From NCBI RefSeq assembly GCF_006345805.1, contig NW_021823867.1, forward strand, positions 1 through 20,932: a DNA stretch of 20,932 nt. Direction: 5' to 3'. The notes beneath the pieces are model-generated. The model was given only the letters and a program-made list of their open reading frames with translations, had not been told where the DNA came from and did no database searches. This document shows positions 1,904 through 19,339 of the stretch, piece after piece. A program made the translations under genes and the position numbers. Numbering within the stretch: the first letter of the stretch is position 1; the number at the start of each line of letters is the position of its first letter. The stretch comes from Octopus sinensis (Eukaryota).

Positions 1904-2151
1904 CTCTTTACTCTTTTACTCTTTTACTCGTTTCAGTCATTTGACTGCGGCCATGCTGGAGCACCGCCTTTAATCGAGCAACTCGACCCCGGGACTTATT
2001 CTTTTTTTGTAAGCCCAGTACTTATTCTATCGGCCTCTTTTGCCGAACCGCTAAGTGACGGAGACATAAACACACCAACATCGGTTGTCAAGCAATGCTA
2101 GGGGACAAAACACAGACACACAAACACACACACGCCATATATATATATTAT

Positions 2152-2183
<32 letters not shown>

Positions 2184-2355
2184 CATATATACGACGAGCT
2201 TCTTTCAGTTTCCGTCTACCAAATCCACTCACTAGGCTTTGGTCGGCCCGAGGCTATAGTAGAAGACACTTGCCCAAGGTGCCACGCAGTGGGACTAAAC
2301 CCGGAACCATGTGGTTGGTAAGCAAGCTACTTACCACACAGCCACTCCTGCTCCT
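1904..2355 (-). mobile_element. SINE family B (tRNA-like head, internal AT/GT microsatellite), full length
   Basis: Reverse complement of 9919-10320 and 17155-17557. A-box-like TGGCTGTGTGG, B-box-like GGTTTAGTCCC, (AAAAGAGT)n tail. Confidence 0.9.
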
Positions 2356-2370
2356 ATGTCTCTTGACTTT

Positions 2371-2710: not shown

Positions 2711-2714
2711 ATTA

Positions 2715-2754
<40 letters not shown>

Positions 2755-2755
<1 letters not shown>

Positions 2756-3090
2756 TGGAGTGAGAGAGCAGTGCATGCCATCAAAGTGACACTGGGGTAA
2801 AATATACGAAGCCCAATATACCCATCATGACTACCCGTCTGATAAAGGTACACCAGGCACATGCATCACAACCATATGTGCGCGACATGGTGATCTCATC
2901 TCAGATAAACAGCACATGACCTTGCAGGTGGGGCCCAGTTAGAATTTTCTTCAGGTTGAGTAGCCCATCCTGCTCAAACGGTCCCTGAATAAGGGTTGCT
3001 TTAGGATGTTGAACGAAACACCTATGTTTCCAGAGGTGAACCATTCAAACTCCAAAGAATCCCTCTCAACACATGGCCATGATGCTCCCC

Positions 3091-3091
<1 letters not shown>
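2755..3091 (-). mobile_element. ~570-bp (TAA)n-flanked non-coding element, truncated copy 1
   Basis: Near-identical to the first ~335 bp of 3313-3879; (TTA)n on both sides. Strand is inferred from the shared end and the variable truncation. Confidence 0.75.
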
Positions 3092-3130
<39 letters not shown>

Positions 3131-3294: not shown

Positions 3295-3312
3295 TTATTA
3301 TTATTATTATTA

Positions 3313-3879
3313 TTGAGTGAGAGAGCAGTTCATGCCATCAAAGTGACACTGGGAGTAAAATATACGAAGCCCAATATACCCATCATGACTACCCGTCTGA
3401 TAAGGGTACACCAGGCACATGCATCACAACCATATGTGCGCGACATGGTGATCTCATATCAAGATAAACAGCACATGACCTTGCAGGTGGGGCCCAGTTA
3501 GAATTTTCTTCAGGTTGAGTAGCCCATCCCGCTCAAAAGGTCCCTGAATAAGGGTTGTTTAAGGATGTTGAACGAAACACCCAGTTTCTAAGGTGAATTA
3601 TTCAAACACCAAAGAATCCTCTCTCAACACATGGCTATGATGCTCCCCCACTACTTCTGCTCGCGATCAGAGATGCACATTCGTCAGCCACTAAGGGACA
3701 TGCTCAAGGTTAAGGTCAAACAACTGACAAGCAAATCTGTGGTATTGAGCAGAATATTTGCTGTAGCCCATCTTTTATACTAGACAAAACAATGTACATG
3801 ATAAACATTTCCAATCAGTTAAGATCAAAAGCCATGAGAGCCACTCCTGGCCACTGCCTGGTACTGCATCAGGGCATTT
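3313..3879 (-). mobile_element. ~570-bp (TAA)n-flanked non-coding element, longest copy 2
   Basis: TTGAGTGAGAGAGCAG...CAGGGCATTT, flanked by (TTA)n on both sides. Shares its left end with 2755-3091 and 4520-4727. No recognisable ORF. Confidence 0.75.
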
Positions 3880-3994: not shown

Positions 3995-4487
3995 ATTTTG
4001 CACAGCTTCTAACGCTGGAGATGTACTGCAGTGTCAGCTGTTCACTACCAGCAAACTAAGGTAACACTTATATTTCGCGCACCTTCTGGAGTATTCGGGC
4101 GGTTTCAAGCAGTGCTGTTTTCTGCAAGTGCTCCCCACTTATTGCAGCCCCTATTTGTTGTATGTACCTCTCGAGATTGTGGCTCACTGTTTCCAGAGCT
4201 CCGACAATTATTGGTACTACTGCTACCTTTTTCATCGACCACAACTGCTTAACTTCCCAAGCTAACCTGTCATATCTCTCGACTTGTTGTCAGCTGGGCA
4301 TGCTATATCTATGATCCAGCATAATTTGTTTTCTTTCTCAATTAAGACTATGTCTGGCGTCCTATTCTCTATCTCATGGTCACGCTGAATCATAAAATCC
4401 CATAGGATCTTTGCATTTTTTTCCGACGATGCCTTCGGGTTTGTGGGCGTACCAATATTTTGCTCTGTCAAGTCCGTACTTGTTGCA
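3995..4487 (-). mobile_element. 5'-truncated R4/Dong-clade non-LTR retrotransposon: C-terminal restriction-like endonuclease domain plus short 3' UTR, frameshifted
   Basis: Minus-strand translation over two frameshifts gives CNKYGLDRAKYWYAHKPEGIV / NAKILWDFMIQRDHEIENRTPDIVLIEKENKLCWIIDIACPADNK / VERYDRLAWEVKQLWSMKKVAVVPIIVGALETVSHNLERYIQQIGAAISGEHLQKTALLETARILQKVREI*, with the stop at 4068-4070. ILWDF..PD..D and QKTALL.TARIL are typical R4/Dong C-terminal motifs. (TAA)n lies on both sides. Confidence 0.85.
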
Positions 4488-4519
4488 TTATTATTATTAT
4501 TATTATATTATTATTATTA

Positions 4520-4727
4520 TGAAGGAGCAGTTCATGCCATCAAAGTATCACTGGGGTAAATATATGAAACCCAATATACCCATCATGACTACCCGTCTGA
4601 TAACGGTACACCAGGCACATGCATCACAACCATATTTGCGCGACATAGTGATCTCATATCAAGATATGACCTTGCAGGTGGGGCCCAGTTAGAATTTTCT
4701 TCAGCTCGGGTAGCCATCCTGCTCAAA
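4520..4727 (-). mobile_element. ~570-bp element, truncated copy 3
   Basis: GAGCAGTTCATGCCATCAAAGT...CCTGCTCAAA matches copies 1 and 2; preceded by (TTA)n at 4488-4519. Confidence 0.75.
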
Positions 4728-8143: not shown

Positions 8144-8263
8144 CATTATTCAGTTTTATTTTATATTCATTGATAAATTTCTCAGGCAGAGTTACTACAA
8201 ACATCAACACCAACAACATCAACACAACCAGAGAACAAAATGAAAACAACAGCTAAAACAAAA

Positions 8264-8916
8264 CGTACGTACATACATACATACATACATACATACATGC
8301 ATGCATGCATACATACATACATGCATGCATACATACATGCATACATACATACATACATACATGCATGCATGCATACATACATACATACATACATACATAC
8401 ATGCATGCATGCATACATACATACATGCATGCATACACATGCATACATACATGCATACATACATACATAATACATACATGCATGCATGCATACATACATG
8501 CATACATACATACATCCATACATACATACATACATACATGCATGCATGCATACATACATGCATGCATACATGCATGCATGCATGCATGCATACATACATA
8601 CATACATACATACATACATACATGCATGCATGCATACATACATACATACATACATGCATGCATGCATACATACATGCATACATACATACATAATACATAC
8701 ATGCATGCATGCATACATACATACATACATACGTACATGCATGCATACATACATGCATACATACATACATGCATGCATACATACATGCATGCATACATGC
8801 ATACATACATACATACATACATGCATACATGCATGCATACATGCATGCATGCATGCATGCATACATACATACATACATACATACATACATACATACATGC
8901 ATGCATGCATACATAC
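8264..8916. repeat. (CATA/CATG)n tetranucleotide array, ~650 bp
   Basis: Direct inspection; it is the source of the many MHAYIHT/MYVC pseudo-ORFs. Confidence 0.97.
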
Positions 8917-9041
8917 CAACAAAAATACCCTGTTCTTGATGTTAAAATTCCAATGTAGGAGCTTGGAACTAGGTTAGAAACCGGCTCTTTCACTATTGGC
9001 AAGAAATCTTAAAATAAAACTGAATAATGACATACATACAC
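8917..9041 (+). mobile_element. Putative retroelement 3' end with AATAAA and a CATA tail
   Basis: Ends TAAAATAAAACTGAATAATGACATACATACAC, identical over 32 nt to the reverse complement of 8132-8163. Confidence 0.45.
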
Positions 9042-9278
9042 GCAGTGTCAGTGGAAGACCCTGCCTCAGTAAAGCTGGACTCAAGAGTCATCTTCGTAGT
9101 CATAAAGCAAGACAGATGAGTGACAACCTGGCCACTGGTGGTGGTGTAACACACCATACTAATCATATCTATCGGGCATGTGGAAGAGAGTGTAATTCAG
9201 CAGGAGGACTTAAACGACATGCAAAGGTACATGGAGCCCAGTTACAACTACAGCCGACTGTTATCAGTAAAGGTAATA
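9041..9278 (+). pseudogene. Decayed tandem C2H2-type zinc-finger coding relic, probably the C-terminus of a non-LTR (RTE-like) ORF
   Basis: RSVSGRPCLSKAGLKSHLRSH (9041-9103) and YRACGRECNSAGGLKRHAKVH (9170-9232). Each lost Cys is one substitution from TGY. There is no TGEKP linker. The clade assignment is inference. Confidence 0.6.
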
Positions 9279-9399
9279 TATATATATATATATATATATA
9301 TCAGAAATCAGAAATTTCTGATTTTAGTGATCAATGAATAAACTTCACTGAAAATATATATATATATATATATAATTATGAAGTCTAGACAGATATTTT

Positions 9400-9479
9400 C
9401 AGCTAGCAGGCCTTGCTACTCTAGACTGATGATGGGCAAGACCCAGAAACATGCATGTCTCTAGATGCAGGCCTAGCTG
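9400..9479 (+). ncRNA. Type I hammerhead ribozyme with palindromic stem III
   Basis: Stem I TCTAGA 9420-9425 / TCTAGA 9460-9465, extended with bulges to CAGCTAG 9400-9406 / CTAGCTG 9473-9479. Core CTGATGA 9426-9432; stem II TGGG-CAAGA-CCCA; GAAA 9446-9449; stem III palindrome CATGCATG 9450-9457; GTC cleavage triplet 9457-9459. Confidence 0.85.
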
Positions 9480-9787
9480 TTGGGAGTGTTTGTCTCCCAT
9501 TCGAAAATATATAAGGACGCAGGAAATGTGTCAAGGCCGACAGGAAGCGTCGATGCTTCCTAGGGCTAAATAGCGGTGGTGTAATTCCCTTTACAGGACT
9601 GTCACGTTAAGTTGACAGTATACAACCACTCTCTCTCTCTATATATATATATATTTAAGGCTACACATTTGCAATATTTTTTTCCTCTTTAATACTGCAA
9701 GGTGTGAGTTGTAAAGATTCAACTGCTATTTCTAGTTAGGACTATGACCATGTAAAGCCGCCTGCCCAACTCAGTATGTCAGCGATA

Positions 9788-9918: not shown

Positions 9919-10320
9919 CAGGAGTAGCTGTGTGGTAAGTAGCTTGTTTACCAACCACATGGTTCCGGGTTCAGTCCCACTGCGTGGCATCTTGGGCAAG
10001 TGTCTTCTGCTATAGCCCCGGGCCGACCAATGCCTTGTGAGTGGATTTGGTAGACGGAAACTGAAAGAAGCCTGTCGTATATACGTATATATATATGTAT
10101 GTGTATGTGTTTGTGTGTCTGTGTTTGTTCCCCTAGCATTGCTTGACAACCGATGCTGATGTGTTTACGTCCCCGTCACTTAGCGGTTCGGCAAAAGAGA
10201 CCGATAGAATAAGTACTGGGCTTACAAAGAATAAGTCCCGGGGTCGAGTTGCTCGACTAAAGGCGGTGCTCCAGCATGCCGGCAGTCAAATGACTGAAAC
10301 AAGTAAAAGAGTAAAAGAGT
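9919..10320 (+). mobile_element. SINE family B, full length
   Basis: A-box-like TAGCTGTGTGG, B-box-like GGTTCAGTCCC, (AAAAGAGT)n tail; near-identical to 17155-17557. Confidence 0.9.
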
Positions 10321-14959: not shown

Positions 14960-15125
14960 TATTAAAAGACGCTCAGGGAAGGACAGAAAAGGTGTTTTAC
15001 GTTTCGAGCAAAGCTCTTCTTCAGAAACAGGAGACAGTGGAAAGTCCAAGAGAAAAGGAAGACGGAGGGGAAAAGATCGCCAACAGTCCACATGTAGTTA
15101 CATTTTGAAATGACCGGAAGGGAAT
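14960..15125 (-). mobile_element. Penelope-like element pseudo-LTR fragment
   Basis: Contains a minimal hammerhead of the PLE type (see 14993-15029). Boundaries are approximate; no RT or GIY-YIG coding sequence is visible. Confidence 0.55.
14993..15029 (-). ncRNA. Minimal type I hammerhead ribozyme (Penelope-type)
   Basis: Minus strand: TGTTT-CTGAAGA-A-GAGC-TTT-GCTC-GAAAC-GTA-AAACA. 5-bp stem I, 4-bp stem II, ACGT palindromic stem III, cleavage after GUA (between 14998 and 14997). Confidence 0.8.
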
Positions 15126-16280: not shown

Positions 16281-17154
16281 TAATACTCTATTTGACAAAG
16301 ATATATATAATAATGTATGTAATATATGCATATATAAAAATGTTATATTTAGACTACACATTAGTGTGTGCGTGTATCTATATATATATATGTCTGATGT
16401 GGTGTGTATGTGTGGGTGCGCGCGCGCGTTTGCACGTTTACAAAATACTATTGCGCAGGAAATTCAGACGATCATTCAATAAAATTGAGAGAGACACTCG
16501 GTAGAAGTGGGTGGTGCAGATGCTGTTACTTGTGTTGTTTTTATTGTTGTTGTTGTTGGTGGTGGTGATGGTGTTGGTGGTGATGGTGGTGGTACTATCG
16601 GTGCTTAAGTGGGTGGGTACTAGTGTTGTAGTTAATAAGCGTTAGTTCATAACTAACTCACGTGTCGATAGCTGCCCGCTGTTTGGTTCTTTTTTTTTTA
16701 TCCTAGATTGGTGATTGGCACAATTGGGTGTACATACTCACACACACACACACACACACACCACACACACACACACACGTACGTACACACACAAACATTT
16801 AAATACGTATTCATACATACATGAACGCTGATCATAACAAACACATTATAAGCATATATGTACACACATGAAAATGTTTGGCAAATGCTAAGTAACATGC
16901 AGACACAAACGTTTACTGAATATAAATACCCTATTTGACAAAGTTACAGAGATGTAATAAAAATGTAAAAATTCACAAAAAAAAATGAAAACACGAAAGA
17001 ATTGTACATGTAGTAAATAAAAGTCGACTCCGTAAGATACGAGAAAGTCTAAAGAAATGATAGGAAATTCTTTTTCTTTATATGAAAGGGTTGCAGAATA
17101 ATTGACTTTTATATTATTCTTGTTAAATAATTTACAAAGCTTAAACAAATATAT

Positions 17155-17557
17155 AGGTGCAGGAGTGGCTGTGTGGTAAGTAGCTTGCTTACCAACCACA
17201 TGGTTCCGGGTTCAGTCCCACTGCGTGGCACCTTGGGAAAGTGTCTTCTACTATAGCCTCGGGCCGACCAAAGCCTTGTGAGTGGATTTGGTAGACGGAA
17301 ACTGAAAGAAGCCCGTCACATATATGTATATATGTGTGTGCATGTATGTTTGTGTGTCTGTGTTTGTCCCCCTAGCATTGCTTGACAATCGATGCTGGTG
17401 TGTTTATGTCCCCGTCACTTAGCGGTTCGGCAAAGGAGACCGATAGAATAAGTACTGGGCTTACAAAGAATAAGTCCCGGGGTCGAGTTGCTCGACTAAA
17501 GGCGGTGCTCCAGCATGGCCGCAGTCAAATGACTGAAACAAGTAAAAGACTAAAGAC
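17155..17557 (+). mobile_element. SINE family B, full length
   Basis: A box TGGCTGTGTGG, B box GGTTCAGTCCC; matches 9919-10320 and 1904-2355. Confidence 0.9.
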
Positions 17558-19218: not shown

Positions 19219-19245
19219 CTGAAGAAGAACCTTGTCCGAAACGTC
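19219..19245 (+). other. Degenerate minimal hammerhead-like motif
   Basis: CTGAAGA-A-GAAC-CTT-GTCC-GAAAC-GTC. Stem II has one mismatch and stem I does not pair. Confidence 0.4.
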
Positions 19246-19339
19246 CCTCAACAGCAAGTTCACTGTACTCTTTATATTGATTTCACTATATAAGTGCTAC
19301 CTTTGCAGACCAACATCAACCTCTTTGGATTCTGATTGT

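What the first reader, a model, noticed from the sequence alone, without database searches (positions are those of the whole stretch)
9041..9628. Hammerhead ribozyme in the apparent 3' UTR of a zinc-finger-terminated LINE-like element
Seen: a complete type I hammerhead (TCTAGA-CTGATGA-TGGG[CAAGA]CCCA-GAAA-CATGCATG-TC^TCTAGA). Stem I extends with bulges over 9400-9479, and stem III is an 8-nt perfect palindrome. It lies ~170 nt downstream of, and on the same strand as, two decayed C2H2 fingers. One deviation: the first stem II pair is U-A rather than the usual R-Y. Established: animal type I hammerheads with palindromic stem III (which permits dimeric folding) are known from Penelope-like elements, retrozymes and certain satellites/SINEs, whereas LINE-associated ribozymes (R2, RTE) are typically HDV-like and at the 5' end. 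Inference: the fingers, ribozyme and tail are one element. A LINE whose 3' UTR self-cleaves could release a separate short structured RNA, define a new RNA end, or act as a retrozyme-like passenger. I know of no described family with this layout.
Basis: partly seen in the sequence, partly recalled or inferred. Interest (0 to 1): 0.85.

Follow-up and report, generated by a model that had tools for sequence, protein, structure and literature searches.

The report
Lone hammerhead ribozyme beside LINE fragment
The self-cleaving hammerhead RNA motif is real and is the ordinary animal type carried by small parasitic "retrozyme"/Penelope-related repeats, but it only sits next to a broken piece of a LINE element and does not belong to it.

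Summary
The hammerhead is present at 9420-9465 (+), with cleavage predicted between C9459 and U9460. It has the full core, a 6-bp helix I, a 4-bp helix II, and a short helix III inside a 10-nt palindrome. A covariance model built only from four experimentally tested animal retrozyme hammerheads finds it full length at 34.8 bits (E about 1e-7). The next best hit in 55 kb scores 12.5 bits. Rfam's own models do not report it, which I cannot explain.

The two decayed fingers really are the tail of a LINE ORF2, but only as an internal fragment (9038-9274). A 94% paralogue in Octopus vulgaris and three more distant relatives continue into a third finger, a stop codon, a 10-60 nt UTR and an (ATGT)n tail. 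None has a hammerhead. In the window the LINE copy is cut before finger 3 by (TA)n. The ribozyme lies in a separate, strongly structured block of about 250 bp, with (TA)n on both sides.

Best reading: a solitary copy of a retrozyme or Penelope-related hammerhead element next to an unrelated LINE fragment. This is a known kind in a host where I found no published report. I could retrieve no second copy of the block, so conservation within a family is untested.

The parts
9420..9465 (+). Type I hammerhead ribozyme: helix I proximal 6 bp, core, helix II, helix III. C17 is 9459 and cleavage is predicted between 9459 and 9460.
   Evidence: Sequence read directly. Only descriptor hit in 55 kb. Model R1 built from four validated retrozyme hammerheads: 34.8 bits, E 7.9e-8, full length, all pairs standard.
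9387..9494 (+). An asymmetric internal loop (UAC / U) follows the 6-bp proximal helix I.
   Evidence: Flank duplex -18.5 kcal/mol, p about 1e-3. Fold of 9376-9628.
9376..9628 (+). Hammerhead-bearing block of 253 bp. Presumed solitary copy of a retrozyme or a 5'-truncated Penelope-related end. GC is 0.46 against 0.38 for the window.
   Evidence: Bounded by simple repeats. RNA fold -89.4 kcal/mol, z = -4.4, 0 of 200 shuffles fold as well. GC. No homology to the LINE paralogue.
9354..9375 (.). (TA)n microsatellite on the left flank of the block.
   Evidence: Tandem Repeats Finder.
9629..9655 (.). (TC)n(TA)n simple repeat on the right flank of the block.
   Evidence: Sequence. Tandem Repeats Finder reports 9640-9654.
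9038..9274 (+). Neighbour, not part of the ribozyme element. Internal fragment of a LINE ORF2 C-terminal tail (decayed C2H2 fingers 1 and 2), truncated at both ends. Finger 3, the stop codon, the UTR and the (ATGT)n tail are missing.
   Evidence: 94% identity to L001 9923-10159. Alignment A1 with three-finger relatives. 3' ends of relatives. LINE 3' end absent from the window.
9276..9353 (.). Spacer between the LINE fragment and the ribozyme block: (TA)13 followed by a 53-nt unassigned stretch.
   Evidence: No match in any fetched locus.

Best explanation
Positions 9376-9628 are a solitary genomic copy of a small hammerhead-carrying retroelement. This is the class known as animal non-LTR retrozymes, or a 5'-truncated terminal piece of a Penelope-like element. 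It lies in a (TA)n microsatellite that happens to sit about 100 bp downstream of an unrelated, doubly truncated LINE fragment.

Shown: the ribozyme is a canonical metazoan type I hammerhead.

Inferred mechanism: when transcribed, helices I and II dock and the RNA cleaves itself after C9459, leaving a 2',3'-cyclic phosphate and a 5'-OH at U9460. Helix III is only A-U, C-G, A-U closed by the palindromic loop UGCA. Two copies can therefore pair through the 10-nt palindrome into a double hammerhead, which the thermodynamic model strongly prefers. In active elements of this class, which are tandem copies, this cuts unit-length RNAs that are ligated into circles and reverse-transcribed by a Penelope-type enzyme. 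A lone copy like this one is most likely an inert relic, or at best a weak self-cleaver in cis.
For: Match to known hammerheads:
- The architecture equals the published definition of canonical metazoan hammerheads: helix I 6 bp, helix II 4 bp, helix III 1-2 bp with a palindromic 2-4 nt loop, active as a dimer (PMC4209133).
- The 46-nt layout is identical, element by element, to the experimentally active coral retrozyme ribozyme Amil224 (PMC7229834 supplementary Table 2).
- Model R1, built only from four tested retrozyme ribozymes, scores the site 34.8 bits, E 7.9e-8. The next best hit is 12.5 bits.

Folding:
- The MFE of two copies is exactly the double hammerhead with a 10-bp intermolecular helix III. 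It scores -68.1 kcal/mol against 2 x -28.4 for two monomers.
- The hammerhead fold of the monomer (-23.3) is less stable than a competing fold (-28.4).
- The block as a whole is unusually structured, z = -4.4, as described for retrozyme RNAs.

Context:
- The block is flanked by (TA)n on both sides. Penelope-like elements show an insertion bias for microsatellites, including (TA)n (PMC8557442).
- Dispersed monomers of retrozymes are documented (bioRxiv 10.64898/2026.07.22.740005).
- O. vulgaris carries Penelope-like elements, including recently active families (PMC13282606).
- The window holds a second, Penelope-type minimal hammerhead at 14993-15029(-).

Independence from the LINE.
Against: - No second copy of the block could be retrieved, so repetitiveness, family conservation and covariation are untested.
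- There is only one ribozyme and no tandem partner in the window. The defining tandem layout of retrozymes is not met here.
- No Penelope RT/GIY-YIG coding remnant is present in the window or L001.
- Rfam hammerhead models do not report the site.
- The 10.1-11.1 pair is U-A, not the highly conserved G-C. The axolotl Ax353 ribozyme has U.U there and still cleaves as a dimer.
- GC of 0.46 is marginally above the <0.45 quoted for animal retrozymes.
Confidence: 0.65

Rival explanations
1. The fingers, ribozyme and downstream sequence are one LINE-like element whose 3' UTR self-cleaves. A variant is a chimeric subfamily in which a LINE fragment acquired the hammerhead block as a new 3' end.
For: They are on the same strand and 100-180 nt apart. 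Only one close paralogue could be examined, so a window-specific subfamily cannot be strictly excluded.
Against: Homology to the paralogue ends at 9274, inside the ORF and before finger 3. All four relatives with a readable 3' end have a stop codon, a short UTR and an (ATGT)n tail, with no hammerhead. Two (TA)n runs and an unrelated 53-nt stretch separate the two parts.
Confidence: 0.04
2. The motif is a chance look-alike with no ribozyme ancestry.
For: The bare descriptor is expected about once per 2.8-Gb genome (my estimate, supported by 0 hits in 40 Mb). Rfam models are silent. The only metagenome matches to core plus helix III were bacterial coding sequences without helices. No relatives were found.
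Against: Beyond the descriptor, several independent features agree. Helix I has a distal extension (p about 1e-3). The palindrome is perfect over 10 nt. Helix and loop sizes equal those of a validated coral ribozyme. R1 gives E 7.9e-8 in 110 kb searched, which scales to roughly 4e-3 per genome. The whole block is strongly structured.
Confidence: 0.06
3. It is a host-retained (domesticated) hammerhead, for example in an intron, a long non-coding RNA or a 3' UTR. It would be kept for RNA processing and would not be a transposon relic.
For: The core is intact and the non-consensus 10.1-11.1 position is still a Watson-Crick pair. That needs two coordinated changes if the ancestor was G-C. Conserved intronic hammerheads exist in amniotes (Rfam families HH9 and HH10, from my own knowledge).
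Against: No gene or exon is recognisable in the 21-kb window, which is dominated by microsatellites and SINE-like repeats. The flanks are simple repeats. Cross-species conservation could not be tested.
Confidence: 0.08

Closest known systems
Animal non-LTR retrozymes (Cervera and de la Pena 2020, PMC7229834). Examples: coral Amil224, mussel Mg353, axolotl Ax330/Ax353, newt satellite 2, Schistosoma Sm-alpha.
   Same: Canonical type I hammerhead with 6-bp helix I, 4-bp helix II, 5-nt loop 2 and a short helix III inside a palindrome. The carrier block is about 250 bp and highly structured. A model trained only on these ribozymes recognises the site.
   Different: There is a single copy, not a tandem array. 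The 10.1-11.1 pair is U-A. Copy number and circular RNA are unknown. GC of 0.46 is slightly above the quoted <0.45.
Hammerheads in the pseudo-LTRs of Penelope-like elements (Cervera and de la Pena 2014, PMC4209133; Craig et al. 2021, PMC8557442).
   Same: Type I topology, palindromic helix III and dimer logic. Association with microsatellite targets such as (TA)n. Penelope-like elements are present in the O. vulgaris genome.
   Different: [quoted passage not shown] The site at 9420 is the canonical form instead. No RT/GIY-YIG ORF lies nearby. The motif at 14993-15029(-) fits the Penelope type better.
HDV-like ribozymes of R2, RTE and L1Tc LINEs.
   Same: A self-cleaving RNA physically close to LINE sequence.
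   Different: Different ribozyme class. Those act at the 5' end of the LINE transcript and belong to the element. Here the LINE fragment and the ribozyme are separate pieces.

Membership tests
Hammerhead ribozyme, type I (canonical metazoan form) | Conserved core CUGANGA ... GAAA ... U-H at the three-way junction | tested here: met
   CUGAUGA 9426-9432, GAA-A 9446-9449, U9458, C9459.
Hammerhead ribozyme, type I (canonical metazoan form) | Helix I open, helices II and III closed. Helix I 6 bp, helix II 4 bp, helix III 1-2 bp plus a palindromic 2-4 nt loop (PMC4209133). | tested here: met
   6 bp TCTAGA/TCTAGA. 4 bp TGGG/CCCA. A-U, C-G, A-U closed by loop UGCA, within the palindrome ACATGCATGT.
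Hammerhead ribozyme, type I (canonical metazoan form) | G10.1-C11.1 base pair (highly conserved) | tested here: not met
   The pair is U9433-A9445. A validated axolotl ribozyme has U.U here and still cleaves as a dimer, so the feature is typical, not absolute.
Hammerhead ribozyme, type I (canonical metazoan form) | Recognised by a covariance model of validated members | tested here: met
   Model R1 (4 tested retrozyme ribozymes, window sequence not included): 34.8 bits, E 7.9e-8 with filters off and 3e-8 with default filters.
Hammerhead ribozyme, type I (canonical metazoan form) | Reaches the score of an Rfam hammerhead family | tested here: not met
   No hammerhead family at gathering score or at E<=10. 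Unexplained. No positive control could be run.
Hammerhead ribozyme, type I (canonical metazoan form) | Mg2+-dependent self-cleavage after position 17 | not testable with these tools
   Needs in vitro transcription of monomer and dimer.
Animal non-LTR retrozyme | Head-to-tail tandem repeats of 150-450 bp, each with a hammerhead | tested here: not met
   One ribozyme only. There is no tandem copy in the window and head-tail similarity is not significant. Dispersed monomers of such families are documented.
Animal non-LTR retrozyme | Strongly structured unit RNA with low GC (<45%) | tested here: inconclusive
   z = -4.4 for 9376-9628. GC is 0.458.
Animal non-LTR retrozyme | Many genomic copies and linear plus circular unit-length RNAs | not testable with these tools
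   No Octopus genome or transcriptome can be searched by nucleotide here. Indirect attempts failed.
Penelope-like element (pseudo-LTR) | Adjacent RT plus GIY-YIG ORF, with the repeat at both ends | tested here: not met
A 5'-truncated end would not carry the ORF.
   The window copy ends at 9274, before finger 3. Relatives L001, L011, L012 and L013 end with a stop codon, a 10-60 nt UTR and (ATGT)n. R1 finds no hammerhead there.

The most novel reading that the evidence does not exclude
The LINE two-finger fragment, the (TA)n runs and the hammerhead block together form a repeated chimeric non-autonomous element. A retrozyme-type ribozyme would have replaced the normal 3' end of a zinc-finger-tailed LINE, giving a LINE-derived transcript that cuts itself. 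A milder and more likely reading (about 0.35) is that the block represents an undescribed cephalopod retrozyme family, with a U10.1-A11.1 hammerhead, that is expressed as circular RNA.
Probability: 0.04. Interest if true: 0.7.

Novelty: new member of a known kind. Interest (0 to 1): 0.25.

Why it matters
As found, it matters little. It adds an octopus example to the well-described class of animal type I hammerheads carried by retrozymes and Penelope-related repeats. It also removes a tempting but wrong claim of a LINE whose 3' UTR self-cleaves.

Three modest points of value remain:
- I found no paper in the searchable library that reports hammerheads in octopus. A genome-wide census could show whether cephalopods have expressed retrozyme circular RNAs.
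- The U-A pair at 10.1-11.1 in an otherwise textbook ribozyme is a natural variant worth one kinetic comparison.
- Rfam's hammerhead models miss a site that a four-sequence model of validated retrozyme ribozymes finds easily. This matters for anyone annotating animal genomes with Rfam alone.

Tried and rejected
Searches for further copies of 9376-9628, all negative:
- Repeats within the window, and blastn against L001-L004.
- A concatenated six-frame translation of the block searched against 5.8 billion proteins.
- Exact look-ups of the 40-aa and 37-aa ORFs that overlap the ribozyme.
- Two scans of JGI metagenome contigs. The first found nothing. The relaxed pattern found six high-GC bacterial contigs where the match lies in a coding CxxCH-type region without helices I or II, so these are chance hits.

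Bulk sampling of octopus DNA through an RTE-like reverse transcriptase from L001 returned ENA metagenome contigs (ERZ25072740). They share no repeats with the window and were useless for this purpose.

Ideas dropped:
- Terminal redundancy of the block (head against tail) is not significant, p = 0.32.
- The block's 3' part shows no similarity to the tails of the minimal-hammerhead repeats.
- The missing LINE 3' end (finger 3, UTR) is not displaced further downstream, so this is not a nested insertion.
- There are no tRNA-like SINE heads in the window.
- The L001 RTE-like RT is only 27% identical to the RT of the three-finger LINE P0031, so it belongs to another clade.

I did not try to name the LINE clade.

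Full report
**What is in the sequence**

Read directly, 9420-9465 on the + strand spells TCTAGA-CTGATGA-TGGG[CAAGA]CCCA-GAA-A-CATGCATG-T-C followed by TCTAGA. This is a complete type I hammerhead.
- Helix I is 6 bp.
- The core is C3-A9.
- Helix II is 4 bp with a 5-nt loop.
- G12-A14 follow.
- The A15.1...U16.1 pair encloses CATGCATG.
- C17 is at 9459, so cleavage is predicted between 9459 and 9460.

ACATGCATGT is a perfect 10-nt palindrome. As a monomer, helix III can only be A-U, C-G, A-U closed by UGCA. Helix I continues distally over 9400-9419 and 9466-9479 after an asymmetric internal loop. In the fold of the whole block it extends to about 9387-9494. The one departure from consensus is U-A at 10.1-11.1.

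**Is it more than chance?**

- A strict descriptor of my own finds only this site in the window plus a 34-kb octopus locus, on both strands.
- The same descriptor finds nothing in 40 Mb of Markov-random sequence of the same dinucleotide make-up.
- From base composition I estimate about 1.5e-10 per position for the bare motif. That is about one chance hit per 2.8-Gb genome, so the descriptor alone is not decisive.
- The distal helix I is not part of the descriptor. It forms a -18.5 kcal/mol duplex, reached by 0.09% of same-geometry genomic pairs and 0.22% of shuffled flanks.
- The strongest test is an independent one. I took four experimentally tested retrozyme ribozymes from supplementary Table 2 of PMC7229834: coral Amil224, mussel Mg353, axolotl Ax353 and Ax330. 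I aligned them (A2), built covariance model R1 without the window sequence, and searched the window and L001 with filters off.
- R1 finds the site full length at 34.8 bits, E 7.9e-8, with all 12 modelled pairs standard. The next best hit scores 12.5 bits. Default filters give the same hit.
- The coral ribozyme has exactly the same 46-nt layout: 6 bp, CUGAUGA, 4 bp with a 5-nt loop, GAAA, an 8-nt palindrome, then UC.
- Axolotl Ax353 also begins helix II with U. It has a U.U mismatch there and still cleaves as a dimer.
- Against this, Rfam 15 reports no hammerhead family at gathering score or at E<=10, even on 85 nt. I could not run a positive control, so this stays unexplained.

**How it would fold and act**

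For the 80-nt monomer the hammerhead fold (-23.3 kcal/mol) loses to an alternative fold that sequesters the core (-28.4). Two copies co-fold into exactly the double hammerhead with a 10-bp intermolecular helix III, at -68.1 against 2 x -28.4 kcal/mol. This is the dimer logic described for metazoan type I hammerheads (PMC4209133). Invertebrate ribozymes with the same helix III, such as the coral one, also cleave well as monomers (PMC7229834). Monomer activity therefore cannot be excluded. Cleavage itself is inferred, not shown.

**The zinc fingers**

The stretch 9038-9274 is 94% identical to L001 9923-10159. L001 is O. vulgaris OX597815.1.
- A full HMMER scan of 1.84 billion representative proteins found 39 relatives.
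- One of them, P0031, has an RVT_1 domain followed by a C-terminal tail with three C2H2 fingers.
- In alignment A1 every relative has three fingers. The window copy stops a few codons before the third, where (TA)n takes over.

Pfam scores them below its cut-off in the window.

**Are fingers and ribozyme one element? No, as far as this can be tested.**

- In L001, after the second finger, the element continues into the third finger, a stop codon, about 60 nt of UTR ending in ...GGGCAGCCAT, and an (ATGT)n tail.
- L011, the locus of P0031, ends in nearly the same way: stop, about 60 nt...GGGCAGCCATC, (ATGT)n.
- L012 and L013 go from the stop codon through 10-20 nt into (ATGT)n.
- R1 finds no hammerhead in any of these loci.
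- The LINE's own 3' end is nowhere in the window.
- Between the LINE fragment and the ribozyme lie (TA)13, an unrelated 53-nt stretch and (TA)10.5.

**What the ribozyme block looks like**

The block 9376-9628 is 253 bp with GC 0.46, against 0.38 for the window. It folds far better than shuffles: -89.4 kcal/mol, z = -4.4, 0 of 200 shuffles as good. It is bounded by (TA)n on the left and (TC)n(TA)n on the right.

The literature fits this picture:
- Animal type I hammerheads of this form sit in retrozymes of about 150-450 bp (PMC7229834).
- Retrozymes are related to Penelope pseudo-LTRs and leave dispersed monomers (bioRxiv 10.64898/2026.07.22.740005).
- Penelope-like elements show an insertion bias for microsatellites, including (TA)n (PMC8557442).
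- O. vulgaris carries Penelope-like elements, including recently active families (PMC13282606).

The window also holds a Penelope-type minimal hammerhead at 14993-15029(-). It has the extra nucleotide after A9, a G10.1-C11.1 pair and a CG palindrome. A descriptor for this type gave 0 hits in 300 shuffles of 55 kb.

**What is missing**

I found no second copy of the block by any route open to me. No octopus genome can be searched by nucleotide with these tools. Repetitiveness, family consensus, covariation within a family and expression are therefore untested. The tandem layout that defines a retrozyme is not met at this locus, and no Penelope coding remnant lies nearby.

**Verdict**

Its headline, a ribozyme in a LINE 3' UTR, is wrong. 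The best explanation is a solitary copy of a retrozyme or Penelope-related hammerhead element in a (TA)n microsatellite next to an unrelated LINE fragment (confidence 0.65).

Confidence in the rivals:
- Host-retained ribozyme: 0.08
- Chance look-alike: 0.06
- LINE chimera: 0.04

This is a new member of a known kind, and interest is low to moderate.

Noticed in passing
window 14993-15029 (-): Penelope-type minimal hammerhead candidate: TGTTT-CTGAAGA-A-GAGC[TTT]GCTC-GAAA-CG-T-A-AAACA. Helix I is 5 bp, there is an extra nucleotide after A9, the 10.1-11.1 pair is G-C, and 15.2-16.2 is palindromic. It is the only descriptor hit in 55 kb, with 0 hits in 300 shuffles. About 130 nt downstream it abuts (TA)n(ATGT)n.
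   Followed up: partly
window 19219-19273 (+); L001 about 9590-9625: Two further stretches share the core-like string with the motif above: CTGAAGAAGAACCTTGTCCGAAACGTC in the window and TTGAAGAGTGTAAGTGCGAAACGTC in L001. Their helices are imperfect and their flanks are not significantly similar. They may be diverged Penelope-type hammerhead relics.
   Followed up: partly
window 9342-9384 (+): The second-best R1 hit (12.5 bits, E 0.28) is ACTTCA-CTGA...(TA)n...TGAAGT. This is a 6-bp inverted repeat plus the start of a hammerhead core, bracketing the (TA)n run just upstream of the real ribozyme. It is probably chance, but the position is odd.
   Followed up: no
window 9398-9482: Rfam 15 hammerhead families give no hit even at E<=10. 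A model built from four validated retrozyme ribozymes scores 34.8 bits with default filters. The cause is unknown and no positive control was possible.
   Followed up: partly
L001 10160-10350; L011 2752-2839; L012 836-918; L013 970-1114: The three-finger LINE family has a conserved short 3' end (...GGGCAGCCAT in L001 and L011, ACAGCCATC in L013) running straight into an (ATGT)n tail in four loci from different samples. The window has a 670-bp (ACAT/GCAT)n array at about 8250-8920, just upstream of its LINE fragment.
   Followed up: partly
L001 10001-24102: The O. vulgaris gene model P0001 (104 aa, no name given by its source) starts inside the LINE finger fragment (MSDNLATGGG...) and splices onward over 14 kb. 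It looks like an exonised or mis-annotated transposon fragment.
   Followed up: no
window 2003-2357 (+), 9919-10231 (-), 17153-17470 (-): Three copies of a SINE-like repeat, 92-93% alike. One lies only about 290 bp downstream of the ribozyme block, on the opposite strand. ARAGORN finds no tRNA-like head.
   Followed up: no
window 2711-3095, 3295-3778, 4487-4727; L001 244-748: Another dispersed repeat family, 87-89% identical between the window and L001. It was not characterised.
   Followed up: no
L002-L004 (ENA ERZ25072740): Long contigs of an ENA metagenome assembly carry RTE-like LINEs (Exo_endo_phos_2 plus RVT_1). Their RT is 72-73% identical in protein to an O. vulgaris RTE copy. They share no repeats with the window, so they probably come from the DNA of another animal in that sample.
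   Followed up: no
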